From Octopus sinensis (taxonomy: Eukaryota): a DNA stretch of 64,000 bases. The notes beneath the pieces were generated by a model. That model had not been told where the DNA came from. It did no database searches and saw only the letters and a program-made list of their open reading frames with translations. The DNA lies in the NCBI RefSeq assembly GCF_006345805.1, contig NC_043000.1:96968001-97032000 (forward strand). Direction: 5' to 3'. Below, one piece after another: positions 1,840-64,000 of the stretch. How positions within the stretch are numbered: the first letter of the stretch is position 1; each line of letters begins with the position of its first letter. The position numbers were made by a program, and so were the translations under genes.

Positions 1840-1939
1840 NNNNNNNNNNNNNNNNNNNNNNNNNNNNNNNNNNNNNNNNNNNNNNNNNNNNNNNNNNNNN
1901 NNNNNNNNNNNNNNNNNNNNNNNNNNNNNNNNNNNNNNN
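1840..1939. other. Assembly gap (100 N)
   Basis: Run of exactly 100 N. Confidence 0.99.
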
Positions 1940-3640: not shown

Positions 3641-3724
3641 GTCAGGATGGCCGAGTAGTCTAGGTCGCAGTGTTCAGGTCGCAGTCGGGTCTTCCCGGCG
3701 TGGGTTCGAATCCCACTCGTGACA
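3641..3724 (+). pseudogene. tRNA-Leu(CAG), degenerate copy
   Basis: 8 substitutions versus the intact copies, including an A:A mismatch in the anticodon stem, a G:G mismatch in the acceptor stem and an altered D arm. Confidence 0.8.
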
Positions 3725-5872: not shown

Positions 5873-5956
5873 GTCAGGATGGCCGAGCGGTCTAAGGCGC
5901 TGCGTTCAGGTCGCAGTCGGGTCTTCCCGGCGTGGGTTCGAATCCCACTTCTGACA
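5873..5956 (+). tRNA. tRNA-Leu(CAG)
   Basis: 84-nt class II cloverleaf GTCAGGATGGCCGAGCGGTCTAAGG...GGTTCGAATCCCACTTCTGACA, anticodon arm CTGCG-TTCAGGT-CGCAG, with a T-run terminator ~8 nt downstream. Confidence 0.97.
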
Positions 5957-8576: not shown

Positions 8577-8660
8577 GTCAGGATGGCCGAGCGGTCTAAG
8601 GCGCTGCGTTCAGGTCGCAGTCGGGTCTTCCCGGCGTGGGTTCGAATCCCACTTCTGACA
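8577..8660 (+). tRNA. tRNA-Leu(CAG)
   Basis: Identical to 5873-5956; T-run follows. Confidence 0.97.
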
Positions 8661-9472
8661 CATACTACTTTTATTTTTTACATGATCACTACTTGTCTCT
8701 GTAATAGATTTTTGCTGTGAAGTAGATTTAGTGGATCGTACTTCTAACCAAGCCACTTACAAGTGTCAAAGAATGCACTACATGTTGCAATTTATAAGGT
8801 ATGTAAATGTTTGATTAAAAGTACTCTCTAGATATTTATAGCTTTTTCTGCTTCGGTTTTCATTGTCCGATTGTGACCTAAACGAAGTGCATTAGACTGC
8901 TTGGCCTTCCTGACATAATACTCAGCATTTTACTTTTTATCGCTTTATCAGTAGGCGGTCTAAAGAAAAAACAAGACAACGTCTACAGTTTAGCGAACTT
9001 CCTGTATCAAACAAGCAGACAATATGCCCGCTTCAATGAGATTGTACTTCCGCTCGGCTCGGAGACCGGTATCTTTGTAGCTTGGTTGGGCCTTCGAGGG
9101 TATGCATCTCGATACAATAGCTGCAACAGAACCGCTATAAGGCACTGGAGTCGAATCTCTAAAAATTTCATACACAGGCGCGCGGGCACACACACGCACA
9201 CACACAAACACTCACACACACACACATACAGAGGACCACGACTAATAAACTACGCAATAAATGACAATTCTTTATGTCAATACTGATAAAAAGTTAAATT
9301 GTCAGTGTGTCATTCATTTACATGCACTATAATTTGAAACACGTAGGTTTATTCGTAGGCCCTTATAAGTGGTTTGGTTAGAAGTATGACTTACTAAGTC
9401 AACCATGCAACAAAAAGTCAACATGGCCATGGGCAGTCTTTATTAAAAACGAAAAAAAAAAAAAGCCGTGGT

Positions 9473-10614: not shown

Positions 10615-10724
10615 GCTCACACAGACAACACACATAAAACTACAACAAACAAACTACGCAACAAATTACTACGCTTTATCTCATTACTGATAAAACATTA
10701 AAACGTGATTGAGTTTTTCAGCAT

Positions 10725-10808
10725 GTCAGGATGGCCGAGCGGTCTAAGGCGCTGCGTTCAGGTCGCAGTCGGGTCTTCCCGGCGTGGGTTCGAATCCCAC
10801 TTCTGACA
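10725..10808 (+). tRNA. tRNA-Leu(CAG)
   Basis: Identical to 5873-5956; T-run follows. Confidence 0.97.
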
Positions 10809-11129
10809 TTCATAACTTTTATTTTTAAGTGAAGACTACTCTTCGCAGTAATGGATTTTTGTTGTTATAGATTTAGGAAGTCGTATAACTTTGTTTTCAG
10901 ACTAAGATATTTACAAGTTTCTAAGAATTCTACGTGTTTCAAATTACAAAGCATGTAAATGTTTGGTTACATGAACTCTTACAGGTTCTTTTGCTTTGAA
11001 TTTCAACGTCCATCCCACCCACCTACTCACACACATCGCAAAGAAATTATTTCACGCTCTTTCAAATATATAAATTCCGATGACTTTCAACAACAATGAG
11101 TTTTCACTGGAAAAAATAGAGTTTCTAAA

Positions 11130-14924: not shown

Positions 14925-16610
14925 TTTTTTATTACTGGCACAAGGCCTAAACACAGAGGGTACATACACAGACATGCGGGAACAAAAAACACATGAAAGG
15001 ATGAATGTGAAATGAATAAAATTACAATGCAAATGAGACGGCCATCTCACTCCCGCTGCGAGATGAAACCGTGGATTCCTTTTCCTTTAAACCTTTACAT
15101 TTTACATAACAATTTCTAGCATCGCTCCGAGGCGAAACCGCGACTTCCCTTTTCGCTTTTACCTTACAATTATAAACTTTTTAAACAAATGTTCATACCT
15201 GCTTTACTTGTTTTCTTTTCCTTTTTTAAAACTAAAAAGTTCAACCAAATGTTTTTCACAGTTTCTAATTAAATTATGACTTACCACTTCATCCACCTTC
15301 GGCCTCAATGGGTTTAGTTTCTCACGATGTCCTTCAATTTTGCAGTCTTTTAAGTTGGGGTGTCCTACATCTCACTATAATTTTTCTTTTTGTTTGTGTT
15401 TTTCATTGTTGTCTCTTTTTGTCTCTATATTTCTGCTGTTTTTGGATTTCTTGTGATTGTATCTGTGTGTCTGCGTGTTCGTGTATTTGTGTGCCTGTGT
15501 GTTCGTTTGACTGTAATTCTACGTGTTTCGTCTGTGTGTCTATGTCTTTAGGTTTCCGTAATTCTGGGTTGTCTTGATTCTAGTCTGAATAACTCTGTAC
15601 TTGTAAGTCCTTTACTAGTAATTCTACTGGTAAATTTTCTCCGTTTCTCGTCGTGGGTAGGGTTTCTCTTCCATTGCTTTACACTTCTTAATTCCACTGT
15701 CGTCGGTAACTTCCTTCTCTCTCTTTTTCTGAGTTTCACCTCCGCAAAATTCCCGTCTTGTTCTGTTTTTTGTTTCTGCTTTTTGTCTACCATTATATCT
15801 TGCTGAACACTCCCCTCTACCATTTCTACTGCAGCTCTAGGGCATTTCCTTCTCAAGTGCCGTCTTTCACCACATCCATAACACTTTGGGGGTCTCCCCC
15901 ACCCCAACAACATTATTTCCAGCTTTTCTCCATTTGGTAGTTCCAATGTTTCCGCCATTTCGTCGTAATATTCCGGGCTCACTGCGCAGATTATTTCTAG
16001 ACCATAGCCCACTCATTTCACTTGTGTTTGGCTTATCATTCCGATCCTCAGGTCTTTCCATTGTTCCTCAGCTCTAAATTAATAATTGCGGCTCTTACCC
16101 ATTTTGGGTCTATCGACACTGGGATTCTTCCCGCCCTAATCCTAACGATTCTTTTGCCCAAACAGTTTGGCATCAACGTCAATTTCTCTCCCTGTAACAG
16201 CCTGTTGTCAGACTTTTCGCCTCCTCTTTTGATACAAAGGTTACTGCTATAGTCGCAAATTTCTTTCCTCTTGTAAAAAAAAGTTATCCTTTCCCTATTT
16301 GGTCCTCCAAGATTTCCTCTATCTCTTCCTGCGGCGCGTGTTTTTATTCTCCTATTTACATTCGAAAATGTTCTGAATATGCCCGTCTTGCTTTCCATTT
16401 TTCTTTTTTCCTCCTCTGGCAGGGTCATTTTCATATTTGACCCTTCTTTCTTTATCATACCATAATATTTGGTTATCTTTTCCTCATTCCACTCCATCAT
16501 CTCCGGCTTCAGCACACGTGGGTCCAGGGGAATTCAACCTCCAGTAGCCTCTGCATAACTTTTCATTTTGTCAATTATTTCACTACCACCCAACAATGGT
16601 GGCTTCAAAC
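14925..16610 (-). mobile_element. Tx1/L1-like non-LTR element retaining only a gag-like ORF1 and a 3' tail
   Basis: Frameshifted ORFs 16048-16515 and 15548-16012 with a perfect CX2CX4HX4C knuckle (CYGCGERRHLRRKC). The motif ELPNG..GR.PKC is shared with ORF1 of the 25.6 kb element. AATAAA-like A-rich end. Confidence 0.7.
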
Positions 16611-19350: not shown

Positions 19351-19559
19351 ACTTTAACTTTTAGGGCTAAACAGTAGCTAAATTTCTCTCAAATCAAACA
19401 ACTCCGTTTAAGAAAAAAGAAAGAAAAAAATAATGAGAAGGGCATTTCAGAATACTTATAGATACAGTTTCAGAAACTTCTACAAAGATGGGATAGTCAC
19501 GGCTAGAATGCCTTTTATCAAAGGTCTGTTTAAGGCTGAGGTGGGGTTAAATAATAATA

Positions 19560-19770
19560 GTTTCAAATTTTGGCACAAGGCCAGCAAGTTTGGAGAAGGG
19601 ATAAGTCGATTACATCGACCCCAATGTTCAACTGGTACTTATTTTATCGACCTCGAAAGGATGAAAAGGCAAAGACGACCTCGGCGGAATTTGAACTCAG
19701 AACGTAAAGACGAACGAAATGCCGTTAAGAAAATTTCCCGGTGTGCAAACGATTTTGCCAGTTCACCGCC
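19560..19770 (-). mobile_element. SINE family A
   Basis: Same core as the 18359 copy. Confidence 0.82.
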
Positions 19771-19849
19771 TTAAGGTTAAATAATAATAACAACAACAAA
19801 TTCTCAGATATATACACATCAGATGTACACTCGTGTTAGCACAGTTTAT

Positions 19850-25599: not shown

Positions 25600-28575
25600 G
25601 CTTCCTAAGATTAAGTAAAAAGAAAATGGAAAAAAAGAAAGAAAAGCTCAGTTGCAGACATTATCGAGCTGCCTAACGGAGCACAATTTCAGGTCGTGGT
25701 GGAAGGTAGAAAGCCAAGGTTCCACACTTGTGGGTCTAACACTCATTTGAAGGCCCTCTGCTCACAACAGCTACAACAAAATGGAGCTAAAAGAACAGCG
25801 GCCCTGTTACCATCATCACAAGAAGGCCTAAAGCTGCAACAACAATTAATGCAGCAACAGCCATTAAACAACATCTTGAACTGCAACGGGCGACACAGAT
25901 ACGCCATGTACTGCCGACATTGGAGATTCAGAAGCCTTATCATGCGACGAGAAGGAATTGAATCTGCCAAGAAGGACTTGTGTTTGGGAAAAGCGGGAAA
26001 ATATTAAAAACATATGGCCGTCCTAAGCTAAAAAGTGATAATACAGGACGAGGAAAATTCACCTAATCCACCATTTACACTAACAACATCGACGCACTCA
26101 CCCGAATCCCAACAACAAAAGCAATGTAAATACTTTCAACCACAAACACAACTACAAAAAGCACCAAAACAGAAACAAATACACGAAGAGAAACAACAGT
26201 CACAAGAACAACCGGTACAACTTACTACAGAACGCCTCATCAACTTCACAGTCATTCGCAAGAGCAACAGCGAGCTGATGCAGGAAGTGGTGAACAACAT
26301 GAATATTCATACAAAATGAGTAGGGTTCGACGAATTCTTTCGAAATGTTTCCATGACAGACAGCTTAGAAAAACTGACACATGCACATAGCTAGAACTAA
26401 AAAGAAAATATCCAAAAGATATTAGGCCGTTTAAAGCCGGACAAAAGGACTTTGGGGAGGCCCTTCATTAAAGATAATGTTTCAGACAAGGCAGCTGAAT
26501 CAGCCGACATTCTCAAAATCCAAGGTAAGTGATCTTCCATTTTATTTCTCCGATAAACATGATTTTCAGAATGAAGTGTTTGAATGTTGTGGCCTTGGAT
26601 CAGCTCGGAAGTAAGATTACTTGCTAAATAACCCCAGGTCGCTCGATTTAGATGTGGCTGCAATTAGCGAGACAAGGATTTCCAATGCACAAGCAATAGC
26701 ACCCATTTTAGATTACTGTGAGATATTCTCAGCATGTGGTCTGTCGGGAGCGGGAGGCAGGTCCGAAAATCTCGAAGTATAGGTAATCTTCTTGGACGCG
26801 GGCGGCAGGATGGTGGTCCTAGATGGGAATGGCAATGAAGGTGGCGCCCTTAGACTGGTGATCGCTTATGCCTCGACAGGGGCTGGAAGGCAAGAATTCT
26901 TCAGGCGTCTATAAATATTCCTGGGAACTTGTCGTAGTTTAGTTCTAGGAGGGGACTGGAATGGGATCATGGACGCACGGAAGGACTGTGTGGGGCTAGT
27001 ACACAGAAGAAGGGAGAACAAAAGCCTCGAAAACCTACTCAAAATCTTCCCATTGTCTGATAGGTATCGACTGGATTTCTCTGATGTGTCAGTGTGGATA
27101 TGGAGCAACCACAATGGGTCATCCAGATCGTATCTAGATAAAGTATTTGTTAGATCAATGCATAGAGATAGAGTAAGTTGCCCACAATTTCAATTGGTCG
27201 GTTACACAGGCCACAAATTTGTGACCCGTACAGTCGAGTTAGATAGGACCCGTGGACAAGTATGCCGATACTGTAAGTTAAACGCGCCCTTTTCCGCCTG
27301 CAAAGACTACAGTGACCGCATTAGTGAACTAGTTAAGCGGCAGGTAATGGGGACAGTCTTCAACAACCGGTAGTGGGCCGCCCCGAAGTAGCTGATTAGA
27401 GAAATACCGATAGCGTTTAGCAAAGGGTTAGCTATAGAAAGGAATAGATTAGCGAGTGAACTAGTTAGCAAATTAGAAGAGGCGATTAGGAAGGGCGTCG
27501 CAACCGATGAGTTAGCGGCGAGAATAGCCCTTGATTATTTCTTCGAAGCGAAACACGAAGATTGCGTTGTCAGAGCTAAGGCCTGTGTGCTCAAATAGGA
27601 AAGAACTAAAGCTCTCTGATGGGCCCAAACGGTGGAGACGCGACGTGAAAACAAAACCACGATTAGAGCTTTGACGGATCGAGATGGGCGCGTGCTTGTT
27701 GTCTCCGAGAAGACGTGTGCGGCTTTTCAACAGCACATCGCGCAGCTGTATGGGAAGGGTGATGAGTCGACGACGGTAGTGGACGTTAATTCGTACCTGG
27801 ACTGTCTGCCGCGTCTCTCGGCAGCTGGTGCCAGGTTATGTCAAAAGCCGATAACAGCTGCTGAAATTCGGGAGGCGATGAGCGATTGCACAAGTCACAG
27901 ATCGCCCTGTTTCGATGGTCTGCCCATGTATTCTAAGTATTGATGCTAGATTTGTTTGACGATCTCTTAACAGACGTCTACCGCAACTGGCAACAGAACA
28001 GGAGAATTCTCAGTATTGTGACACTGCTGAGGAAGGACGCCTACCATAGGGATGTACTAGGGAATTTTCAGCTCATAACTCAGCTAAACACAGAGTTTAA
28101 GATTTTGGCCAAGGTGTTAGTGGAAAGGTTGGCGCTTGTCGTCGGTAGCGTGGCCGGAGAAGCGCAAACGTGCGTAATCCTTAGCAGGTCTATCCACGAC
28201 AACCTCCACCTTGCGATACGTCATAGAGAGGACTGGGACCAAAGCTGGCTTCGAGGGTGCTCTGATCAATTTGGATCAATCGGAAGCATTCGATAGGGTC
28301 AAACATCGCTACGTGGAAGCCATCCTGAAAGCAGACGATTTCGGACCCATTTTCAGAAGCTAGATCGCTGAAATGCACAGTAAACGGTTACCTATCGGAA
28401 CCGTCTGACATTGCATGCTGAGTCCGTCAAGGCTGCCCGATGTGAGTTGGTAGCAGGGGCTAAAATCGATGCTGATAAATCGGTGGGTTTGCGGCTGGGT
28501 TCCTGGAGAGGCAGGGTCGATGCCGTCGGACGGCGTCCTCGGATGCTGGACCGACGGATCTGTTAAACTGCTCAA
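25600..28575 (+). mobile_element. Tx1/L1-clade LINE, decayed (ORF1 zinc knuckle + APE endonuclease + partial RT)
   Basis: ORF1 ADIIELPNGAQFQVVVEGRKPRFHTCGSNTHLKALC; endonuclease motifs LDVAAISETR, GGDWNG, SYLDKVFV; RT motifs SPCFDGLP, ITQLNTEFKILAKVL, LDQSEAFDRV, RQGCP. The YADD region is deleted and the element is 3'-truncated. Confidence 0.9.
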
Positions 28576-41155: not shown

Positions 41156-42045
41156 ACATACATATATGTATGTATGTATGTGTGTATATTGCATATACTA
41201 TATATATATTGTATATATTATATATGTGTGTGTGTGTGGGGGGGTAGGTGCATGTATATGTTCAGGTATTTGTTTAACATACAAGTATGTGTGTATGTAT
41301 GAATGTATGTATGTATATATGTGGATATATGTGTATCTATATATGTATACATACAGAGATTATGTTCAGTATTTCCTTATGTATAGTATTCGTGTATAAA
41401 TACGAATGAACATGACAGTAAAATGAAAGCGATAAAAATTGATAAAATATGAGAAACAATAAATGAAGCCACTAATGAAAACACAGAAATAAATGTATAA
41501 AATTGGAGATGCTCAAGTCAAATATAGCTATAGATGTCAAAGTAAAGTTATAAAAGCCAATAGAAACTCACAACAGACTTAATAAATTAAAAACAAAGTG
41601 TTTTTATAACGGACTCTAAGCCTCCAAGAAGGTCACGTCTTTTGGTCCGTTTGTTGAATAGTTGTTCTCTCCTTTTTTTTTATTTAATTTGCTGCTTTGT
41701 AATTTTCCGTTGTGTTGTTGTTGTTGTTGCTAATGTTCTTGTTGGTGTTATTGTTGTTGTTTCGATGAGAGTATTATTTTATCTTTGATTTTGTTTTCGT
41801 TTCATTATGGATGGCATAGTTGTTTTTTGGTGTTCTCATGTTGCTGTTATTTTTATTTTTATATTTTTGTTGTTCTTTAACCATTATCGAGTAAACCAAT
41901 GCATGGTCAAATTTGTTCCTGCCTGAACTATATCCGCCAGCCAACCACTATTTTTTAAAAAGCGGACAGCAGCAAGAAACTATTTCCACCAATTTCGAAA
42001 GAGGTTTCTTTACGAGTACATGAAATTTCATTATTTAAGAGACAA

Positions 42046-42260
42046 GGCGGTGAGCTGGCAGAATCGTTAGCACGCCGGGCGAAATGCTTAGTGGTATTTC
42101 GTCTGCCGTTACGTCCTGAGTTCAAATTCCGCCGAGGTCGACTTTGCCTTTCATCCTTTCGGGGTCGATAAATTAAGTACCACTTAAGCACTGCGGTCGA
42201 TATAGTCGACTCAATTCTTTTTTCTGCCCTTGTTTGTCCTCTCTGTGTTTAGCCCCTTGC
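42046..42260 (+). mobile_element. SINE family A
   Basis: Near-consensus copy with CTCTGTGTTTAGCCCCTTG tail. Confidence 0.88.
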
Positions 42261-43149
42261 CGAAATCACGCGTAAACGGCTCTTTTCCTCGGAAAAGTAA
42301 AATTTAGGCTATTTCTTGAACGCCCTGCTACCGCATAACAGGTATTTCGGGTCCTTTATCGCAAATGGCTGTTACCTAGAAATAGCAGCCAGATCTTTGG
42401 AGGAGAGATACGTTGAATGCACTAGAAAAAAAACCTATGGAAAAAATTATTTCACAGTGAGATTACAAACAGGTCTTTTACGAAATATTTACCGTATTTT
42501 TAAAGTCATTTTCACTTTGATACATTTTTTAAATATGCTAAAAAAATTTTTGTAATGGTATTCACTTGAAAATACTTTTAAAAACATTAAAATATTGCCT
42601 GTTTAAAGAAAGCTGAAATATAAATACTGTATAAACAACTTACACTTTTGAAATCGCATTCACTTAAAAATATTTCTGAATGATCAAAATATTGTGTTTA
42701 ACAAAAGCGAAAATAGAAACATTTACTGTAAAAAGTAAATCGTATGTTTTCGTTGTCAAGTTACTGTATCTAATTGAAAGGTTAGAGTTTCTTCCATTTA
42801 AGGATGAAGCTATATTCGGAATATTTTCCCATTATCCACTGTTTTGGGTATTTATACCCCTAAATCCCGAATATCTCAATAACTTCTGGTCTGATTTACG
42901 CAAAACTTGTTTTAATCCGTTCGTATTAACATTTCAGGAGCTACTGAATTCATAGTATTTTCCCATTATGAGCCAGTTTGGCTGTGTAGCATTGCAAGTA
43001 AGCAATACCAACCAAGGAGATGTAAACCGCAATGATAAACACCAATTACGATCAATTTGTAGTAGTGGAAATAATTATGATACAGTTAACACGGTAACGA
43101 CACCGGTAAATGGAGTCGGGACTGCCTTATATACAAATAAATACGATAA

Positions 43150-43560
43150 ATGCTCATGCAGAGAAAAATCAAAATGTCCTTTGATGAATCTCTGTATAAG
43201 TACAAATCTTATATATAAATGTACCGTGCACACAAGGGGAGGGCCGTATGTTTACATTGGGCAGACGGCTGATTCATTTAAGAATCGTTATCGTAACCAT
43301 GTTGCCAGTTTTAAGATAATCGTAAGAGACATTAAACATCTTTGGCAGATATTGTATAGCGACTGAAGGAGGATAAAATGACGTGCAACATTAACTGGTC
43401 CATAGTAAAGTACGCGAAATCATACAATATAATTTGCAGGAGAGGCAGTCTCTGCTCCGATGAATCTCTGTCTATTCTGTAGACTAACGAGATCATCAAT
43501 AGAATATCTGAACAACTCTCGAGATGCCTACACGCTTATAAATGTACTTTCGTACAATGC
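43150..43560 (+). mobile_element. Penelope-like element, GIY-YIG endonuclease remnant
   Basis: CSCREKSKCPLMNLCISTNLIYKCTV...YIGQTADSFKNRYRNHVASF, then after a frameshift INWSIVKYAKSY...LC..E...INRISEQLSRCLH. Confidence 0.85.
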
Positions 43561-43969
43561 AGTGGAAATGAATTTTGAGTAACCGTTAACAATTTAATTT
43601 ACATTAATGTATAACTTAAGTTTACTATTAACCTCCCCATTCTTACAAACACCAAGTAGATAGCTAACTCGCTTTGTGATCATGAGTACACCAAACCTCA
43701 CGTCTGAGTATGCTCACATTTTTGAGGATGCTTGTATGAGCGAGTGTACTCGCGCCATGCAGTTTGCCCGATGGCGTTTATACATCCGTATTTGTTAACG
43801 GTTATTTTTAATACTTTTCTCGCTGGATTGCGTGTTCGTTTCTCTTTTTCTCATCTGTGATTTTATTTTTGATCTTTTATATAAATAATTACATTTCCTC
43901 TGTCTGGCTGCTTCTCTTTCAACAAAATGGAAAGTTACATTGCGGAACAGTTATTTTAATGAGTTGTAT

Positions 43970-46062: not shown

Positions 46063-46403
46063 TTTGAAATTTTTGCATTTCTATTGCTCCCATGTCAAGC
46101 AAAGACATTAATTTTATTTAATTTTTATTTTCTACAGCAATTAATAATATTGACATAAAGAACTAGAGGTTTTCGTCTGTGCTTTGTTTGCTTGTTTGTT
46201 TGTGTTCCTTTGTTCATACCAACCACCACACCAAACTTTGGCAACACAAATGTTTCTAAATAACACCTATTATTAAATAATGGTATAATATAATAATTGC
46301 TGCTAGAAACAACTGTCTACTCTGATTTGATAATCGTTATTATTATGGCAATGTAAGACTTTAGAAACAATTAATGGTGATGGATGTGAGGTTGTTTAAT
46401 AAT

Positions 46404-47075
46404 GGTTTCAACTTTTGGCACAAGGCCAGCAATTTCGTTGAAGGGGATTATATCGACCCCGTTGCTCAACTGGTACTTTTTTCATTGACACCGAAAGGAT
46501 AAAAGACGGTCGACCTCGGCAGAATTTGATCTCAGAACATAAAACAGACGAAATGCTGCTAAAAATTTTTGCTTGGCACACTAACGATTCTGCCAACTCG
46601 CCGCCTTACGTGGTTGTTTCATAATATCAGTTTCAAATTTTGGTGCAAGGCCAGCAATTTTGGAGGTGGTACTAAGTCAATTACATCGACTCCAGTGCAC
46701 AACGGTTACTTATTTTATCGACCCCGAAAGTATGAATGCCAAAGTCGACCTGGGTAGAATTTGAACTCAGAAAGTAATACAGACGAAATGCTGCAAAATA
46801 CTTTGTCCGGTATGCAACCGATTCTGTCAGCTCGCCGCCTTGCAAGATTATTTGATAATCCTTATTGCTGTAGGCACAAGACTTGACATTTTGGGTAAAG
46901 GAGATACTTGAGTACGTCGACCCGAGTGTTTCACTGGTACTTATTTTATCGAACCCCGAGAGTATAACAGCAAAGTCGACCTAGGTGGATTTTTTACTCA
47001 GAAAGTAAAACAAAGAGAATGCCATGCCGGTAAGGATTTTGTCTGGTGTACTAACGATTCTACCAGCCCGCCGTT
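46404..47075 (-). mobile_element. Three head-to-tail family A SINEs
   Basis: Copies at about 46404-46605, 46630-46839 and 46867-47073. Confidence 0.85.
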
Positions 47076-50853: not shown

Positions 50854-50958
50854 ACATCCAGCCCATCTACTACCCACGAACGCATTGCTTAAATGCCTAC
50901 TAATTTTAGCGGTGTAACATTATTCAATAAAGCAATTTACATATTAAACACATTACTT

Positions 50959-51188
50959 ATTTCTTTAGTGCCCACAAGGGGCTACACACAGAGGGGACAA
51001 ACAAGGACAGACAAACGGATTAAGTCGATTACGTCGACCCTAGTGCGTAACTGGTACTTATTTAATCAACCCCGAAAGGATGAAATGCAAAGTCGACCTC
51101 GACGGAATTTGAACTCAGAACGTAACGGCAGACGAAATACTGCAAAGCATTTCACCCGGCGTGCTAACGTTTCTGCCAACTCGCCGCC
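50959..51188 (-). mobile_element. SINE family A
   Basis: Near-consensus copy. Confidence 0.88.
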
Positions 51189-52084
51189 TTAATATTAAGC
51201 ACATTACTGACAGATGGTACGTAAATATTAATTACCATAAAAGACACAGTATTTCATTTTTGCAACCATAATATACTACCAAGTACATTAAAAGTTTGCA
51301 AGTCAATATTGTGTCTTACTTTTCGTGTTACCAATGCGATATTCTCATTTTTAAGTGATAAACTCCAGATTTTCTATAGAATTCAGAGCTATTGTAAGAA
51401 AGATTTAAGTCGTGTGACATTACAGGAGGATAGCAGCTCTTCGAAAGATATTTTGTGTTGCACTTACTGATTTACTCATTCATATATTATCAGCTGTATA
51501 CTAGAGTAAATAATCGGATAATTTATAGAATAGCAATGATAGTGGATGGTTTGATTTATTGTTCAGTATGTTATTTATATGTGTGTGGGATGTACAAAAA
51601 TACAAGTATTGATCCCATGGTTAAGTGTCGCTTTATATTTTTAGTTTTTCTTCTTGCACATCTCATACAATTTATCAGATATCTTTTTTTAATCATTAGT
51701 GATGTCTGCATGTAGCTGCATATATTCTTACACAAAAACGAACATATACACGCGTACGTACTGTACAAACCACGAACACACTCAAGCACACAAATATACA
51801 TACGAACACCAGCATGCGCCGGCTACGCGCGAACACAATCACACAATCACCGTTACTGAATTAAAATCATTGACGCTGATTCCACCGAAGAATATAATTT
51901 TCTCACGTTTCCTCAGCCAGGAGAATTCTTAATTTGCTTGTATTTTTAGCTGTAGATGGCTCAGGTTTTTTTAATACAATTTCCGAGTCTTGTGTGTGTC
52001 TGCGTATGTGCGCGTGTGTGTGTGTGTGTGTATGTGTGTGTGTGTGTGTATGTGTGTGCGCGCGCGTGTGTGTGCATTTAGATG

Positions 52085-53034: not shown

Positions 53035-53655
53035 CTGAAGGCACAAGGTCTGAAATTTGCGGGGAGGGATTAGTCGATTACATCGTCCCCAGTACGCAAC
53101 TGCTACTTAATTTCTCGACTCCGAAAGAATGAAAGGCAAAGTCGACCTCGCGGGAATTTGAACTCAGAACGTAAAGACCGACGAAATACCTATTTCTTTA
53201 CTACCCACAAGGGGCTAAACACAAAGAGGACAAACAAGGATAGACAAACGGATTAAGTCAATTATATCGACCCCAGTGCGTAACTGGTAATTATTTAATC
53301 GACCCCGAAAGGATAAAAGGCAAAGTCGACCTCGGCGGAATTTGAACTCAGAACGTAGCGGCAGACGAAATACCTCTAAGCATTTTGCCCGGCGTGCTAA
53401 CGATTTTGCCAGCTCATCGCCTTTGGCATATAACGACAATAGTCATAATCCTTTCTACTATAGACACAAGGCCTGGAATTTTGGAGGTGGATGTAGTCGA
53501 TTTCATTGAATTCAGTACTTGACTGGTACTTAATTTATCGACTACGAAAGGGTGAAAGGCAAAGTTGAGCTCGACAGAGTTCGAACTCAGAACGTAAAGC
53601 CGGATGAAGTGCTGCTAGGCAATTTCTCCGGCACACTGACGATACTGACAGATCG
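53035..53655 (-). mobile_element. Cluster of three family A SINEs
   Basis: Copies at about 53035-53190 (5'-truncated), 53191-53421 and 53460-53655. Confidence 0.85.
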
Positions 53656-53747: not shown

Positions 53748-54241
53748 GTAACGCATAAAATGGACCAGATTGGTACAGATCCATCAAATGTGGGGTTGCA
53801 AAACAGCGTGTAAGCAGTAAAAATCAGAAACAAAGAATTTTTAAAAATTCAAGCAAACAATAATTTCCCAAAGGGGACAGACTTCCGAGGGCAGCTCTTG
53901 GAAACTCCACGAAAACAATGTCAGCCAAACCACAATGGAAAATGCCCTCTTTGACTTGGACCAGCCTCGCTACTCGCGCGCGCGCGCGCGTGTTTGAGCG
54001 TACGCAACACAAAATGGTCCATAAACTAGCAACTTTAATCAAGTACTATGGACAATAAAAAAATACCAATATATGGCATACAATGGAGAACAAAACCACT
54101 ATAAAACAAGTCCCGAAACAAGTTCATCTTCCCGAGAATTAGAAATTCAATGAAGGACAATTTAAATTTAGAAGCACGAAACACAAGATACGTGTATACA
54201 TCCATCATATATATATAATATATATATATATAGATATATAT

Positions 54242-54272
<31 letters not shown>

Positions 54273-56247: not shown

Positions 56248-56374
<127 letters not shown>

Positions 56375-56740
56375 ATATATCTTCTTTAAGTATTAGAATA
56401 GCTGAAGAAATTTCTTTAGCTGCTATTTTAATGAGTTCAGTATGTGGCAAAGTAATTTATTTTACTAAGCCCTACCCTTATATATATGTAATATTTTGAA
56501 TTCGCCTATAATGGTCCCTTACATACTGAATACTTGGTGAATTTGATTAATAATTAATTAATTTTACCCTCAATTGTTGAAATTATAGTTATATATATAT
56601 ATATATATAATATATATTCACAATCAAGGAACGGCCATAATAGGCCATTCACCCACTAGAAATAACAGCCAAAAGCTTCAACCGCAAAATACATTAATTC
56701 TGTAAACCAGGAGAAAAATTGAAAAAACATTTACCCTGAA

Positions 56741-56845
56741 ATTCCTTATACGATGCACCGTTTCGTCTACTGTTTAATGTAAACTGACCTGATTAAATAA
56801 ATCAAGCCAATCTACCATAGGCTCTTAGATTCATCAGTAAGGAAT
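56741..56845 (-). ncRNA. Type I hammerhead ribozyme, unit 1
   Basis: AUUCCUUA-CUGAUGA-...-GAAA-CGGUGCAUCG-UA-UAAGGAAU; core intact. Confidence 0.88.
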
Positions 56846-57232
56846 AGCAAATCGGAACAGATATTTTTCACGAGGCTTCACGTCCATGCCTCGCCAATAT
56901 CTGACCTAAAATTTTCAAATCGTCGCACTCGCGTCCAAATTTATCGGCAGCAAAATAAATATAAGCCGCCGATTCCATTACGGAACTAACCAGAAATTCA
57001 TAATTAATCAATATAGGGAGGCAAAAAAATTTTGTAGAATTCTTTTGCCCCAGCGGCCTAGTGGGAAAAAATAAAATAGTCATAAACCCATTTTTAAGTT
57101 CAATATCACAATCAAGAACGGCCATAATAGGCCATTCACCACATAGAAATAACAGCCAAAAAGCTTCAACCAACCGCAAAATAACATTAATTCTGTAAAC
57201 CAGGAGAAAATTGAAAAAACATTTACCCTGAA

Positions 57233-57337
57233 CTTCCTTATACGATGCACCGTTTCGTCTACTGTTTAATGGTAAACTGACTGATTAAATTAAATCAAGC
57301 CAATCTACCATAGGCCCTTAGATCATCAGGAAGGAAT
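57233..57337 (-). ncRNA. Type I hammerhead ribozyme, unit 2
   Basis: Same fold; small deviations in stem I and the helix II base (possible read errors). Confidence 0.75.
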
Positions 57338-57719
57338 AGCCAAATCGGAACAGATATTTTTCACGAGGCATTCACGTCCATGCCTCGCCAATATCTGACC
57401 TAAATTTTCAAATCGTCGCACTCGCGCCAAATTTATCGGCAGCAAATAAATATAAGCCGCCGATTCCATTACGGAACTAACCAGAAAATTCATAATTAAT
57501 CAATATAGGGAGGCAAAAAATTTTGTAGAATTCTTTGCCCCCAGCGGCCTAGTGGGAAAAAATTAAATGTCATACCTTTTTAAGTTCAATATCACAATCA
57601 AGGAACGGCCATAATAGGCCATTCACCCACTAGAAATAACAGCCAAAAAGCTTCAACAAACCGCAAAATAACATTAATTCTGTAAACCAGGAAGAAAATT
57701 GAAAAACATTTACCCTGAA

Positions 57720-57827
57720 ATTCCTTATACGTATGCACCGTTTCGTCTACTGTTTAATGGTAAACTGACCTGATTAAATTAAATCAAGCCAATCTACCAT
57801 AGGCCCTTAGATTCATCAGTAAGGAAT
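57720..57827 (-). ncRNA. Type I hammerhead ribozyme, unit 3
   Basis: Same fold; 1-nt insertion in helix III. Confidence 0.8.
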
Positions 57828-58212
57828 AGCCAAATCGGAACAGATATTTTTCACGAGGCATTCACGTCCGTCCATGCCTCGCCAATATCTGACCTAAATT
57901 TTCAAATCGTCGCACTCGCGCCAAATTTATCGGCAGCAAATAAATATAAGCCGCCGATTCCATTACGGAACTAACCAGAAAATTCATAATTAATCAATAT
58001 AGGGAGGCAAAAAAATTTGTAGAATTCTTTTGCCCCCAGCGGCCTAGTGGGAAAAATTAAATAGTCATAACCATTTAAGTTCAATATCACAATCAAGGAA
58101 CGGCCATAATAGGCCATTCACCCACTAGAAATAACAGCCAAAAGCTTCATCAACCGCAACATAACATTAATTCTGTAAACCAGGAGAAAATTGAAAAAAC
58201 ATTTACCCTGAA

Positions 58213-58317
58213 ATTCCTTATACGATGCACCGTTTCGTCTACTGTTTATGGTAAACTGACCTGATTAAATTAAATCAAGCCAATCTACCATAGGCCCTTA
58301 GATTCATCAGTAAAGAT
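58213..58317 (-). ncRNA. Type I hammerhead ribozyme, unit 4
   Basis: Same fold; core intact, stem I 5' strand variant. Confidence 0.8.
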
Positions 58318-58697
58318 AGCCAAATCGGAACAGATATTTTTTCACGAGGCATTCACGTCCATGCCTCGCAATATCTTACCTAAAATTTTCAAATCGTCGC
58401 ACTCGCGCCAAATTTATCGGCAGCAATAAATATAAGCCGCCGATTCCATTACGGAACTAACCAGAAAATTCATAATTAATCAATATAGGGAGGCAAAAAA
58501 TTTTGTAGAATTCTTTTGCCCCCAGCGGCCTAGTGGGAAAAAATTAAATAGTCATAAACCATTTTTAAGTTCAATATCACAATCAAGGAACGGCCATAAT
58601 AGGCCATTCACCACTAGAAATAACAGCCAAAAAGCTTCAACCGCAAAAAACATTAATTCTGTAACCAGGAGAAAATTGAAAAAACATTTACCCTGAA

Positions 58698-58804
58698 ATT
58701 CCTTATACGATGCACCGTTTCGTCTACTGTTTAATGGTAAACTGACCTGATTAAATTAAATCAAGCCAATCTACCATAGGCCCTTAGATTCATCAGTAAG
58801 GAAT
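58698..58804 (-). ncRNA. Type I hammerhead ribozyme, unit 5
   Basis: Perfect 8-bp stem I, CUGAUGA, GAAA, 3-bp helix III with UGCA loop, GUA triplet; predicted cut between 58706 and 58705. Confidence 0.9.
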
Positions 58805-59185
58805 AGCCAAATCGGAACAGATATTTTTCACGAGGCATTCACGTCCATGCCTCGCCAATATCTGACCTAAAATTTTCAAATCGTCGCACTCGCGCCAATT
58901 TATCGGCAGCAAATAAATATAAGCCGCCGATTCCATTACGGAACTAACCAGAAAATTCATAATTAATCAATATAGGGAGGCAAAAAAATTTTGTAGAATT
59001 CTTTTGCCCCCAGCGGCCTAGTGGAAAAAAATTAAATAGTCATAAACCATTTTAAGTTCAATATCACAATCAAGAACGGCCATAATAGGCCATTCACCCA
59101 CTAGAAATAACAGCCAAAAAGCTTCAACCGCAAAATAACATTAATTCTGTAACCAGGAGAAAATTGAAAAAACATTTACCCTGAA

Positions 59186-59292
59186 ATTCCTTATACGATG
59201 CACCGTTTCGTCTACTGTTTAATGGTAAACTGACCTGATTAAATTAAATCAAGCCAATCTACCATAGGCCCTTAGATTCATCAGTAAGGAAT
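59186..59292 (-). ncRNA. Type I hammerhead ribozyme, unit 6
   Basis: Identical to unit 5 over the ribozyme; predicted cut between 59194 and 59193. Confidence 0.9.
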
Positions 59293-59506
59293 AGCCAAAT
59301 CGGAACAGATATTTTTCACGAGGCATTCAGTCCATGCCTCGCCAATATCTGACCTAAAATTTTCAAATCGTCGCACTCGCGCAAATTTATCGGCAGCAAA
59401 TAAATTAAGCCGCCGATTCCATTACGGAACTAACCAGAAAATTCATAATTAATCATATAGGGAGGCAAAAAAATTTTGTAGAATTCTTTTGCTGATAAAC
59501 ACACAC

Positions 59507-59909
<403 letters not shown>

Positions 59910-60175: not shown

Positions 60176-60233
<58 letters not shown>

Positions 60234-60273
60234 CATGTATATACGTATATATGAGTGTATGTACATAAATACG

Positions 60274-60306
<33 letters not shown>

Positions 60307-60325
60307 GTACAAATATATATGTATG

Positions 60326-60364
<39 letters not shown>

Positions 60365-60366
60365 AA

Positions 60367-60397
<31 letters not shown>

Positions 60398-60536
60398 GTA
60401 TATATATATATGTATGTGTGTGTGGTGCGTGTGTGTGTGTAAATAAATATGTGTATGGTGTGTGTAGATATAGATATGCGTACAAATGCATATATATACA
60501 TGTATGTATTCATATGTGTGTGTAGATATAGATATG

Positions 60537-62134: not shown

Positions 62135-63110
62135 TGACTTTTATGTTCTGAGTTCAAATCCCGCGGAGAACAAATTTATCTTTCATGCTTTTAGGGTCAA
62201 TAAAATGAAGTACTAGTTAAATACTAGAGTCGATACAGTCGACTTGTCCCCTCACCTCAAACGTGTTGCCCTATGCCAAAATACCGGTATTTTGTCCGTC
62301 TTTTTGTTCTGAGGTCAAATTCCACCGAGATCGACTTCGCCTTTCACCCTTTCCGGCAGATAAAATAAGTAACACTTGAATTCTGGGGTTGATGCACTCG
62401 ACTTATCCTTTCCTTCGAAGTTGCTGGTCTTGTGCCAAAATTTGAAGTCATCATCATCATCCTCTTCTTGAACTGGCAGAATTGTTAGTATCAATTCTTC
62501 TGAATTCAAATATCAGCAAGGTCAAATTTGCCTTTCAATCTTTGTTGTTTGTTCCTTCTCAAGCCATGTTTTCCTCATAAGGGCCGGTTTCCTGCTTTCA
62601 ATGATTTATTGTGAGCTGCTAGATGCAGGAGGCAAGAGTGAGAGAAAGTTGTGGCGAAAGAGTCCGCGGAAGTTCGCCATTACCTGCTGCCTGAGCCGCG
62701 TGAGGCTTAGGTGTTTCGCTCAAACACACACATCGCTTGATCTGAGATTCGAACACGCGATCCCTCGACCGCGGGTTCACTGCTCTAACCACTTGGCCAT
62801 GTACCTCCACCTTTTCATCTTTCGTGGCCGATAAAATAAAATACACCTCGAGTACTAGAGTCGGTGTAATCGACTAACCCTTACCCTTAAAATTGTTGTG
62901 CCAAAATTTGAACCCATAATTAATAATTTCAAAAATGCTCTGACAAGCAGGCGAAATCGTTAGAGCATCAGAAAAATGCCTAAATGTTCGCCCAGGGTCA
63001 AACTTGCCTTTCATCCTTTTGAAGTCTATAAAATAAAGTACCGTTCAAGTACTGAAGTCGGTGGTATCGAGTGACCCACTTCTTACAAAATTGTTAGTCT
63101 TGTGCTTAAA
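62135..63110. mobile_element. Nest of diverged SINE fragments (family A on +, family C on - at ~62620-62810)
   Basis: Repeated TTCTGAGTTCAAAT/TTTGCCTTTCATCC cores; the minus-strand head matches 291-484. Confidence 0.7.
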
Positions 63111-63524
63111 TCAGTAACCGTTATTTATTTACTTATCCTTTTTCAAGTTGTGTTCCACATCGGTCTGTGCAACACAAACATTGGACTGTTCAGTAACTTT
63201 ACAGTGTTCCTTTGTGAAGAAGTTGTTATCTCCTTGCTCAATCCTTCAGGTGAAAAGGGGTGCCGTGAGTGATCTCTCACAACCATTAATACGGCGCAAT
63301 TCAACCGATCCTGTGAGAAAAAGAAGAATAGAGAGAAATTCGTACATTCGGTGCTTTTTTTCCCAAGAAATCTAGTGCTTTTAGCTTAGTTTTTCCTTGG
63401 GGCAGGACAGATTGGAGCAATCTAGAGTATAACCAGTCGAAATTGCAAAGAAAACCCGTTCTTGTTTTCTTTGCATCGTCTGTCTGGATGGTTTGCGTTC
63501 TTGTCCCATTTTAGCTTTCTATAT

Positions 63525-63793
63525 ATATGTATATATGAATGTATATATATGTATATATATAAATGTATATATATATACATATAAATGTATATAGATATAT
63601 GAATGTATATAAATATATATATATAAATGTATGTATATGTATATAAATGTATATATGAATATATATATGTATATACATGAATGTATATAAATATGCATGA
63701 ATGTATATATATATGTATATATGAATGTATATATTTATATATACATGTATGAATCGTATATATATATATATATATACATATATACATATATAT

Positions 63794-63881
<88 letters not shown>

Positions 63882-64000
63882 GAATGTATGTGTATATATA
63901 TATATATATGTTTATATATAAATGTACGTATAAATATATAAATATATATATATATATACATGTATATATAATATACATGAATGTATATATATATATATAT
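63525..64000. repeat. Cryptic (TA)n microsatellite with recurring ATGAATGTAT motif
   Basis: Direct reading. Confidence 0.9.

What the first reader, a model, noticed from the sequence alone, without database searches (positions are those of the whole stretch)
56619..59492. Tandem array of ~490-nt hammerhead-ribozyme units: candidate cephalopod non-LTR retrozyme / self-cleaving circRNA system
Seen: six near-identical units, each carrying on the minus strand a type I hammerhead. It has an 8-bp stem I (AUUCCUUA/UAAGGAAU), CUGAUGA and GAAA core, helix III CGG-UGCA-UCG and a GUA cleavage triplet. Predicted cuts fall at 59193, 58705, 58220, 57727, 57240 and 56748, so a read-through transcript would release five monomers of 485-493 nt. 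Established: hammerhead tandem repeats such as newt satellite 2, schistosome Sm-alpha, Dolichopoda pDo500 and metazoan non-LTR retrozymes self-cleave to monomers that can circularise; retrozymes are thought to be retro-inserted as multimers. Inference: this is such an element. The monomer is somewhat longer than the roughly 170-400 nt I recall for animal retrozymes. I know of no described octopus family, but could not search.
Basis: partly seen in the sequence, partly recalled or inferred. Interest (0 to 1): 0.93.

Follow-up and report, generated by a model that had tools for sequence, protein, structure and literature searches.

The report
Hammerhead-ribozyme tandem repeat (retrozyme-type element)
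A 2.9-kb block of six ~487-base repeats each encodes a self-cutting hammerhead RNA motif and looks inserted as a multimer, so it is a new example of the known animal "retrozyme" class rather than a new kind of system.

Summary
Window 56618-59492 is a 5.9-copy tandem array with a 487-bp period. On the minus strand all six units carry the described type I hammerhead. Predicted cuts give monomers of 488, 485, 493, 487 and 492 nt.

A motif this good never occurred in 1000 random 64-kb sequences. The minus-strand monomer RNA is unusually structured (-157.5 kcal/mol, z = -6.9), and 21 G.U pairs mark that strand as the RNA.

- Helix II is a 68-nt extended hairpin.
- The most conserved helix II pair, 10.1-11.1, is A.C instead of G-C.
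- No Rfam hammerhead model matches, even at E <= 10.
- Helix III plus its loop is a 12-nt palindrome, and two copies are predicted to fold as a "double hammerhead".

The array sits between two copies of (TA)nAACTATA, 34 of 35 bases identical. This looks like a target-site duplication in a TA microsatellite, the preferred target reported for some Penelope-like elements.

It is non-coding, and no other copy lies in the window or in the searchable collections.

Best reading: a non-LTR retrozyme-type insertion, a new member of a known kind. Catalysis, circular RNA, genome-wide dispersal and the cephalopod origin could not be tested.

The parts
56618..59492 (-). Tandem array, 5.9 units of ~487 bp. 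The functional (RNA) strand is the minus strand. It starts at consensus position 189 and ends at position 132 in cleavage-site numbering.
   Evidence: TRF; blastn of the unit consensus against the window; unit alignment
59186..59292 (-). Hammerhead copy 1, equal to the array consensus. Stem I is 8 bp, core is CUGAUGA/GAAA, helix III is 4 bp plus a UGCA loop. The cut lies between A17 (59194) and U1.1 (59193).
58698..58804 (-). Hammerhead copy 2, identical to copy 1. The cut lies between 58706 and 58705.
58213..58318 (-). Hammerhead copy 3. Stem I is reduced to 6 bp (A-UCUUUA), and there is a 1-nt deletion in the helix II internal loop. The cut lies between 58221 and 58220.
57720..57827 (-). Hammerhead copy 4. 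A 1-nt insertion in helix III (CAUACG) leaves 3 bp and a 7-nt loop and breaks the palindrome. The cut lies between 57728 and 57727.
57233..57337 (-). Hammerhead copy 5, probably disabled as assembled. It has A2.1 changed to C, loss of one A after CUGAUG, and stem I 3' strand UAAGGAAG. It fails the descriptor. The nominal cut lies between 57241 and 57240.
56741..56845 (-). Hammerhead copy 6. Core and stems I and III are intact, with three small changes in helix II. The cut lies between 56749 and 56748.
59543..59577 (-). Upstream copy of the candidate target-site duplication, (TA)nAACTATA.
   Evidence: Local alignment of the flanks gives 34 of 35 identical. The 16-mer TATATATATAACTATA occurs only here and at 56584-56599 in the window, on either strand.
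59493..59542 (-). 50-nt filler at the 5' junction, (TA)17 followed by AATGTGTGTGTTTATCA. It matches neither the unit nor the duplicated target.
   Evidence: Reading it as a junction 'tail' is inference.
56584..56617 (-). Downstream copy of the candidate target-site duplication. It abuts the last unit directly, with ATAT microhomology to the unit (GTGA|TAT).

Best explanation
This is a non-autonomous, non-coding retroelement of the metazoan non-LTR retrozyme type, present as a ~6-mer inserted into a (TA)n microsatellite. Proposed mechanism: read-through transcription of the minus strand gives a multimeric RNA. Each unit folds a type I hammerhead made of an 8-bp stem I, a 68-nt extended helix II and a short helix III with the palindromic loop UGCA. 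Helix III is marginal as a hairpin, so neighbouring hammerheads pair through their 12-nt palindromes and swapped stem I strands into a double hammerhead and cut after GUA. This releases 485-493-nt monomers with 5'-OH and 2',3'-cyclic phosphate ends. Stem I holds the two ends together, so the monomer can be ligated into a highly base-paired circular RNA, on which the single hammerhead is poorly active. A reverse transcriptase supplied in trans, most likely from a Penelope-like element, copies the circle or multimer and integrates multimeric cDNA at a nicked TA repeat, duplicating the target. Shown here: the array, the motif, its non-randomness, the strand-specific RNA structure, the predicted dimer fold, the absence of coding capacity and the flanking duplication. 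Inferred: transcription, cleavage, circularisation, and the identity of the reverse transcriptase and endonuclease.
For: Array and cut spacing. The conserved core C3-A9 and G12-A14, A15.1-U16.1, C15.2-G16.2, H17 = A and the U1.1-A2.1 pair are all present in type I topology. The motif is far beyond chance, with 0 of 1000 random 64-kb sequences as good. At least two consecutive units have complete hammerheads, which meets the operational definition of an active non-LTR retrozyme. The minus-strand monomer has MFE -157.5 kcal/mol and z = -6.86, against -106.8 and z = -4.69 for the plus strand. It has 21 G.U among 154 pairs and is 63-64% paired whether linear or circular. Stem I closes the monomer fold, bringing the ends together. 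The helix III 12-mer self-duplex is -17.5 kcal/mol against -0.2 for the hairpin. Cofolding two 118-nt domains gives the double hammerhead at -88.5, against 2 x -38.6 for two separate folds. This matches the published architecture of metazoan type I hammerheads. No ORF is conserved between units. A candidate 34-35-bp target-site duplication inside (TA)n flanks the array. This fits reports that retrozyme TSDs exceed 4 bp and that some Penelope-like element clades (Naiads) insert preferentially into (TA)n. GC is 37%, below the <45% stated for the class.
Against: No Rfam hammerhead model matches, even at E <= 10 on a 141-nt slice. The 10.1-11.1 pair, the most conserved helix pair after 15.1-16.1, is A.C in all copies. 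Natural active hammerheads tolerate U.U there, which is reported as the best-tolerated mismatch, so A.C may cost activity. The unconstrained MFE of one domain (-38.6) pairs UGAUG with CAUCG instead of forming the core (-35.7). There is no covariation among units. The hammerhead is not better conserved than the rest of the unit, holding 11 of 64 differences in 22% of columns. No second copy exists in the 64-kb window or in the metagenome, prokaryote-genome or viral collections, none of which is expected to hold this host. No Penelope-like reverse transcriptase was found among the window's ORFs tested. TA microsatellites cover 3% of the window, so TA flanks alone are weak evidence. Low GC equals the local background of ~35%.
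Confidence: 0.65

Rival explanations
1. Dead relic or passive tandem repeat. The unit descends from a hammerhead-bearing element, but this lineage carries a crippling G10.1-to-A change. The array is not processed, and it grew or is kept only by unequal crossing-over.
For: A.C at 10.1-11.1 in all six copies. No Rfam match. The hammerhead is not preferentially conserved within the array. Neighbouring units are most alike, with u1-u2 at 96.5%, as local duplication would give. No other copy is seen.
Against: Every other core position is intact in at least five copies. The RNA-level structure is strongly strand-specific. The flanking duplication argues for insertion of a multimer rather than growth in place. 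Active natural hammerheads with a mismatch at this position exist.
Confidence: 0.22
2. Part of a Penelope-like element itself: tandem pseudo-LTRs left after loss of the ORF, not a separate non-autonomous family.
For: Pseudo-LTRs of Penelope-like elements carry type I hammerheads with a short palindromic helix III. Retrozyme consensus sequences group with pseudo-LTRs in trees. The elements form complex tandem insertions with 30-40-bp tails and favour microsatellites.
Against: There are six head-to-tail units with no ORF remnant between or beside them. Hammerheads of these elements are mostly 'minimal', with helix I of 4-5 bp and helix II of 6-8 bp. Here stem I is 8 bp, helix III is 4 bp and helix II is 68 nt. 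No reverse transcriptase signal was found in the ORFs tested.
Confidence: 0.1
3. Chance resemblance, or an assembly artefact of a repeat.
For: The units differ mostly by 1-nt homopolymer indels, typical of long-read error. An assembly gap exists elsewhere in the window.
Against: The motif has a probability below 1e-3 per 64 kb by simulation. Units carry distinct substitutions and multi-base indels, so they are not a collapsed or duplicated read. Unique flanks lie on both sides.
Confidence: 0.03

Closest known systems
Metazoan non-LTR retrozymes (Cervera & de la Pena 2020, PMC7229834; Li et al. 2026 preprint 10.64898/2026.07.22.740005)
   Same: Tandem multimer of a non-coding, low-GC unit. One type I hammerhead per unit. 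Highly self-paired monomer RNA. A long target duplication. No LTR.
   Different: The monomer of 487 nt is above the 170-400 nt of the 2020 paper, though within the 51-972 bp of the 2026 survey. Helix II is 68 nt instead of about 4 bp plus a loop. The 10.1-11.1 pair is A.C. Expression, circles and dispersal are not shown here. I found no cephalopod family in the searchable literature.
pDo500 satellite of Dolichopoda cave crickets (PMC2837043)
   Same: Unit size of 463-505 bp. One hammerhead per unit. Single and double-hammerhead modes have been proposed. Variation at 10.1-11.1 has been observed.
   Different: pDo500 is a high-copy satellite conserved across 12 species, with a compact 49-nt hammerhead. 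Here there is a 6-unit array flanked by a duplication, and the hammerhead domain is 107 nt.
Newt satellite 2 and axolotl retrozymes Rtz_331 and Rtz_353
   Same: A type I hammerhead with a weak helix III capped by a palindromic tetraloop, with cleavage favoured in dimers. HHR_Amex2 has a mismatch (U.U) at the base of helix II.
   Different: The amphibian helix III has 1-2 bp, against 4 here including A15.1-U16.1 and a G.U. Their units are 330-350 bp, and they have the canonical loop 1-loop 2 contacts.
Minimal hammerheads in pseudo-LTRs of Penelope-like elements (PMC4209133)
   Same: A palindromic helix III region, a dimeric working mode, and association with retroelement insertion into microsatellites.
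   Different: Those motifs flank a reverse transcriptase plus GIY-YIG endonuclease ORF, keep G10.1-C11.1, and have a short helix I. None of this holds here.
Avsunviroid double hammerhead (e.g. ASBVd) and plant LTR retrozymes (my own knowledge)
   Same: The logic of cutting in multimers through an extended intermolecular helix III while sparing the monomeric circle.
   Different: Those are type III hammerheads in RNA replicons, or sit in LTR-bounded plant elements with a primer binding site and polypurine tract.

Membership tests
Hammerhead ribozyme, type I | Conserved core C3 U4 G5 A6 N7 G8 A9 and G12 A13 A14 | tested here: met
   CUGAUGA and GAAA are present in all six copies. Copy 5 has lost one A directly after CUGAUG.
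Hammerhead ribozyme, type I | A15.1-U16.1 pair, and cleavage-site nucleotide H17 (not G) after U16.1 | tested here: met
   GAAA-C...G-U-A gives a GUA triplet in all six copies.
Hammerhead ribozyme, type I | Three helices around the core, with helix I open and helices II and III closed by loops | tested here: met
   Stem I is 8 bp. Helix II has 4 bp, an internal loop and a 19-bp distal stem. Helix III has 4 bp and a UGCA loop.
Hammerhead ribozyme, type I | G10.1-C11.1 (or another Watson-Crick) pair at the base of helix II | tested here: not met
   A opposite C in every copy. U.U at this position occurs in active natural ribozymes. A.C was not found described.
Hammerhead ribozyme, type I | Match to the Rfam covariance models for hammerheads (Hammerhead_1 and relatives) | tested here: not met
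   No hammerhead family appears at gathering score or at E <= 10, even on 141 nt. The likely causes are the ~60-nt insertion in helix II and the A.C pair. That explanation is inference.
Hammerhead ribozyme, type I | Tertiary contact between helix I and loop II | tested here: inconclusive
   An asymmetric internal loop sits where loop 2 normally is, 5 positions from the core. No conserved contact nucleotides could be assigned. Mussel retrozyme hammerheads also lack them.
Hammerhead ribozyme, type I | Site-specific self-cleavage | not testable with these tools
   Needs in vitro transcription or RNA end mapping.
Metazoan non-LTR retrozyme | Tandem repeat with complete type I hammerheads in at least two consecutive units (operational definition) | tested here: met
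   TRF array. Units 1-4 and 6 pass the descriptor. The hammerhead domain MFE is -35.7 to -38.6 kcal/mol, below the -5 threshold. The published pipeline's own descriptor may not allow a 68-nt helix II.
Metazoan non-LTR retrozyme | Non-coding unit without LTR, a few hundred bp long, with low GC | tested here: met
   No ORF is shared by the units and the longest consensus ORF is 43 aa. The unit is 487 bp. GC is 37%, though this equals the background. Primer binding site and polypurine tract were not searched specifically.
Metazoan non-LTR retrozyme | Target-site duplication longer than 4 bp, when present | tested here: met
   (TA)nAACTATA lies on both sides with 34 of 35 bases identical, and its 16-mer core is unique to these two sites in the window. 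It sits inside a microsatellite, so its exact length is uncertain.
Metazoan non-LTR retrozyme | Monomer RNA highly self-paired | tested here: met
   z = -6.86 and 63-64% of bases paired.
Metazoan non-LTR retrozyme | Many dispersed monomer, dimer and multimer copies in the genome | not testable with these tools
   There is no other copy in the window. No host genome is available. Public collection scans and a protein-word search were negative.
Metazoan non-LTR retrozyme | Expression as linear and circular RNA of monomer size | not testable with these tools
   No transcriptome access.
Metazoan non-LTR retrozyme | Co-occurrence with autonomous Penelope-like elements | tested here: inconclusive
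   By eye, an ORF fragment at 42956-43363 resembles a GIY-YIG endonuclease. It has no Pfam match even at E <= 10 and only four unnamed relatives. No reverse transcriptase of that type was found.
Hammerhead satellite DNA (newt satellite 2, pDo500) | Long, high-copy arrays conserved across related species | not testable with these tools
   Only 5.9 units are present here. No genome or sister species is available.

The most novel reading that the evidence does not exclude
This is an active, previously undescribed retrozyme family whose hammerhead is a functional variant. It would have an A.C (possibly protonated wobble) at 10.1-11.1 and a 68-nt helix II whose internal loop replaces loop 2. It would cut only as a double hammerhead in multimeric transcripts, yield abundant ~490-nt circular RNAs, and be integrated by a Penelope-like endonuclease and reverse transcriptase into TA microsatellites. 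If the host really is a cephalopod, it would be the first such family in that group.
Probability: 0.3. Interest if true: 0.55.

Novelty: new member of a known kind. Interest (0 to 1): 0.4.

Why it matters
Hammerhead tandem repeats are the source of a ribozyme-made class of small circular RNAs in animals and are thought to be parasites of Penelope-like retroelements. This locus adds a clean example with both junctions readable: a duplicated TA-repeat target, filler at one end and microhomology at the other. That bears on how multimeric copies are integrated. It also offers two testable ribozyme variants, an A.C at the most conserved helix II pair and a very long helix II. The motif is invisible to Rfam models, which is a practical warning that covariance-model scans undercount such elements.

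Tried and rejected
- Rfam at gathering score over the whole window, at E <= 10 over 3.5 kb, and at E <= 10 over 141 nt. No hammerhead family appeared, only weak miRNA-like hits on the helix II hairpin.
- Covariation among the five full units. None was found because the units are too similar.
- Other copies in the window by sensitive blastn. None was found.
- Exact-pattern scans with a 22-mer across helix II, the core and helix III, and with a gapped hammerhead pattern. Metagenome (2 scans), prokaryote-genome and viral collections gave 0 hits. These collections are not expected to contain an animal genome, so this says little.
- Use of a spurious 55-aa ORF of the unit to fish copies out of the 5.8-billion-protein set. 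No candidates were returned.
- Host identification. Pfam on 13 ORFs gave nothing usable. Two protein searches returned only unnamed Logan proteins. Their run accessions appear in no paper held. One Logan contig shares an 81%-identical repeat with window 43004-43667 but holds no retrozyme unit.
- The bacterial promoter and terminator scan is irrelevant for a eukaryote. Its repeated 'terminator' is simply one hairpin of the unit.
- A first shuffle script hung because of the N run in the window. It was replaced by a Markov-1 simulation.
- A relaxed hammerhead-like hit at 2772 (-) was examined and judged probably chance or decayed.
- The paper on tolerance of pair exchanges in the hammerhead core (PMC1986816) is not held.
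Full report
**Observation**

Tandem Repeats Finder reports a single array at 56618-59492 with period 487, 5.9 copies, 95% matches and score 5186. It is bounded on both sides by (TA)n microsatellites. Reading the minus strand and scanning for CTGATGA shows one sequence six times: AUUCCUUA-CUGAUGA-[68 nt]-GAAA-CGG-UGCA-UCG-UA/UAAGGAAU.

The monomers between cuts are 488, 485, 493, 487 and 492 nt.

The five full units are 92.5-96.5% identical. Of 64 differences from the majority consensus, 43 are indels, and 30 of those are single-base indels next to an identical base. Part of the divergence may therefore be long-read consensus error.

**Anatomy of the motif**

Core and topology:
- All positions of the hammerhead core are present: C3-A9 = CUGAUGA, G12-A14 = GAA, A15.1-U16.1, C15.2-G16.2, H17 = A, and U1.1-A2.1.
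- Helix I is open and helices II and III are closed, which is the type I topology.

Helices:
- Stem I is a perfect 8-bp helix.
- Helix III has 4 pairs (A-U, C-G, G-C, G.U) closed by UGCA.
- Helix II is unusual. It has four pairs (UCUA/UAGA), then an internal loop, then a 19-bp distal stem with a 6-nt loop. The total is 68 nt, at -28.7 kcal/mol on its own.

The nucleotides at 10.1 and 11.1 are A and C, not the near-universal G-C. This is the one departure from the consensus. It matters because Perreault et al. describe this pair as the most conserved after 15.1-16.1. Active natural hammerheads with a U.U mismatch there exist, including axolotl HHR_Amex2, and U.U is reported as the best-tolerated mismatch. 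I found no report on A.C.

By copy, five of six pass a relaxed descriptor:
- The 57329 copy fails. It has lost one A after CUGAUG and has stem I mismatches.
- The 57819 copy has an insertion in helix III.
- The 58310 copy has a 6-bp stem I.

**Chance**

I ran a descriptor modelled on published ones:
- CUGANGA as the 5' core.
- Helix II of at least 3 bp, allowing a 10.1-11.1 mismatch, with a span of up to 110 nt.
- GAAA as the 3' core.
- Helix III of at least 2 bp with a 3-8-nt loop.
- UH at the cleavage site.
- Helix I of at least 5 bp.

In 1000 random 64-kb sequences with the window's dinucleotide frequencies it gave 0.009 hits per sequence on both strands. None was as good as the observed motif. 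The motif also recurs at the repeat period, so chance is excluded.

**Rfam**

No hammerhead family is reported at gathering thresholds over the window, at E <= 10 over 3.5 kb, or at E <= 10 over the 141 nt around copy 1. I record this as a membership test that was not met. My explanation is the ~60-nt insertion in helix II plus the A.C pair. That is inference, because the tool cannot be given an edited sequence.

**The RNA and its strand**

Folded as RNA, the minus-strand monomer (59193-58706) has an MFE of -157.5 kcal/mol, against -117.1 +/- 5.9 for shuffles (z = -6.86). The plus strand reaches only -106.8 (z = -4.69). The 50 kcal/mol difference comes from wobble pairs: 21 of 154 pairs are G.U, and these would be A.C mismatches on the other strand. 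The structured strand is thus the hammerhead strand.

In the fold, the 5' end (UAAGGAAU) pairs with AUUCCUUA near the 3' end. The two termini created by cleavage therefore sit side by side at the three-way junction. Folded as a circle the RNA is 64% paired at -153.4 kcal/mol. The units are too alike to give covariation, with 0 compensatory pairs. The hammerhead domain holds 11 of 64 differences in 22% of the columns, so it is not preferentially conserved within the array.

**Double hammerhead**

The segment A15.1 to U16.1, ACGGUGCAUCGU, is a 12-nt palindrome if G.U pairs are allowed. As a hairpin it is worth -0.2 kcal/mol, and as a self-duplex -17.5 kcal/mol. Cofolding two 118-nt hammerhead domains returns exactly the classical double hammerhead: a 12-bp intermolecular helix III, stem I strands swapped in trans, and both cores unpaired. 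Its energy is -88.5, against 2 x -38.6 for two separate folds.

Cervera and de la Pena describe this architecture for most metazoan type I hammerheads. They have a short helix III with a small palindromic loop, are inefficient as monomers and are active when a second copy is nearby. A single domain's unconstrained MFE also prefers an inactive pairing of UGAUG with CAUCG, at -38.6 against -35.7. This fits a ribozyme that is off in the monomer and on in the multimer.

**Boundaries and insertion signature**

- The array begins at consensus position 189 and ends at position 132 in cleavage-site numbering, so it is not bounded by cut sites.
- (TA)nAACTATA lies on both sides in the same orientation, at 59577-59543 and 56617-56584, with 34 of 35 bases identical. 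The 16-mer TATATATATAACTATA occurs nowhere else in the window on either strand.
- The downstream copy abuts the last unit, with ATAT microhomology to the unit.
- Upstream, 50 nt of filler, (TA)17 followed by AATGTGTGTGTTTATCA, separate the duplication from the first unit.

I read this as a target-site duplication from insertion of a multimer into a TA microsatellite. Published work supports this reading. Retrozyme TSDs, when present, exceed 4 bp. Penelope-like elements show insertion bias for microsatellites, with (TA)n commonly observed for Naiads, and they often leave 30-40-bp tails at one end. As a caveat, TA tracts cover 3% of this window in 86 tracts, so only the shared AACTATA interruption carries weight.

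**Coding capacity and surroundings**

- No ORF is shared between units, and the longest ORF of the consensus is 43 aa.
- Nothing else in the window resembles the unit.
- The ten longest ORFs have no Pfam domain.
- The window looks like eukaryotic repeat-rich DNA. By eye it has a gag-like zinc knuckle, fragments of a non-LTR endonuclease and reverse transcriptase, a mariner-like piece, many SINE-like repeats, and four tRNA-Leu(CAG) genes in a ~2.2-2.7-kb repeat.
- One ORF piece at 42956-43363 resembles a GIY-YIG endonuclease by eye. It has no Pfam support and only four unnamed relatives from Logan assemblies.
- I could not verify that the host is a cephalopod.

**Elsewhere**

Exact-pattern scans of the metagenome, prokaryotic-genome and viral collections found nothing. 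A peptide from the unit has no relatives in the protein collection. None of these resources is expected to hold the host genome. Genome-wide dispersal, the point on which 'mobile retrozyme' and 'passive satellite' differ, remains untested.

**Mechanism proposed**

1. Read-through transcription of the minus strand (inferred).
2. Pairing of adjacent hammerheads into a double hammerhead and cleavage after GUA (the fold is predicted, the catalysis inferred).
3. Release of 485-493-nt monomers whose ends are held together by stem I (spacing and fold shown).
4. Ligation to a circle on which the lone hammerhead is weak (inferred from helix III energetics and by analogy).
5. Reverse transcription by a Penelope-like enzyme and integration of multimeric cDNA at a nicked TA repeat (inferred from the duplication, the filler, the microhomology and the literature).

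I put 0.65 on this overall. The hammerhead tandem repeat itself is near certain. Origin as an insertion is about two in three. Present-day activity is about even.

**Comparison and novelty**

The closest class is the metazoan non-LTR retrozyme. By the operational definition of the 2026 survey, which requires a TRF repeat with complete hammerheads in at least two consecutive units, this locus qualifies.

The 487-bp unit exceeds the 170-400 nt of the 2020 paper. It lies within the 51-972 bp found since and equals the pDo500 cricket satellite at 463-505 bp.

Three features are distinctive: the 68-nt helix II, the A.C at 10.1-11.1, and failure of the Rfam models. Full-text searches returned no paper describing a hammerhead repeat in cephalopods. 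However, such repeats are stated to occur 'from molluscs to arthropods', so finding one is expected rather than surprising. Verdict: a real feature, a new member of a known kind, of moderate interest.

Noticed in passing
window 3641-3724, 5873-5956, 8577-8661, 10724-10809 (+): Four tRNA-Leu(CAG) genes with a long variable arm lie 2.1-2.7 kb apart, so they sit in a tandemly repeated unit. Three are identical by Rfam (54.6 bits each), and ARAGORN adds a fourth at 3641.
   Followed up: partly
window 1840-1939: A run of 100 N, which is an assembly gap. The window therefore comes from a scaffolded assembly.
   Followed up: no
window ~2660-2785 (-), CUGAUGA at 2772: A second hit to the relaxed hammerhead descriptor. 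It has a 5-bp stem I, a 3-bp helix II, and a one-pair helix III with the palindromic loop AGCU, like the 'minimal' hammerheads of Penelope-like elements. Only 0.009 hits are expected per window, but helix II is barely formed. It is probably chance or a decayed relic.
   Followed up: partly
window 42956-43363 (+); also L001 523-1193: An ORF fragment with ...CSCREKSKCPLMNLC...LIYKCTVHT...YVYIGQTADSFKNRYRNH... looks by eye like a zinc-finger linker plus a GIY-YIG endonuclease. It has no Pfam match at E <= 10. Four relatives of 61-77% identity come from Logan assemblies (runs SRR11869390, SRR11869391 and SRR11869394). One contig is 81% identical in DNA to window 43004-43667. It is possibly a remnant of a Penelope-like (Naiad-type) element.
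   Followed up: partly
window 25615-28293 (+); 15551-16533 (-); 7404-7787 (+): By eye these are decayed transposable-element ORFs. The first looks like a gag-like CCHC knuckle followed by apurinic-endonuclease-like and reverse-transcriptase-like pieces of a non-LTR retrotransposon. The second is another gag-like knuckle (zf-CCHC, only E = 0.65). The third is a mariner-like transposase piece.
   Followed up: no
window 19412-19771, 46365-46760, 50893-51189, 53074-53506 (+); 41958-42248, 62318-62512 (-): A short interspersed repeat recurs many times. It is recognisable because its translations share strings such as FWHKASNFGGG...YLF.RPRKDE.QSRPRRNLNSER, so it is SINE-like.
   Followed up: no
whole window, e.g. 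54207-54272, 56313-56380, 59509-59615, 60190-60415, 63520-64000: Dinucleotide microsatellites are very dense. There are 86 perfect (TA) tracts of at least 6 units covering 3.1% of the window, plus many (TG)n and (TC)n tracts. GC is about 35% throughout.
   Followed up: no
window 56618-59492: Differences between repeat units are dominated by 1-nt deletions and insertions in homopolymer runs (30 of 64 events). This suggests unpolished long-read sequence, so apparent defects in hammerhead copies 3-6 may not all be real.
   Followed up: partly
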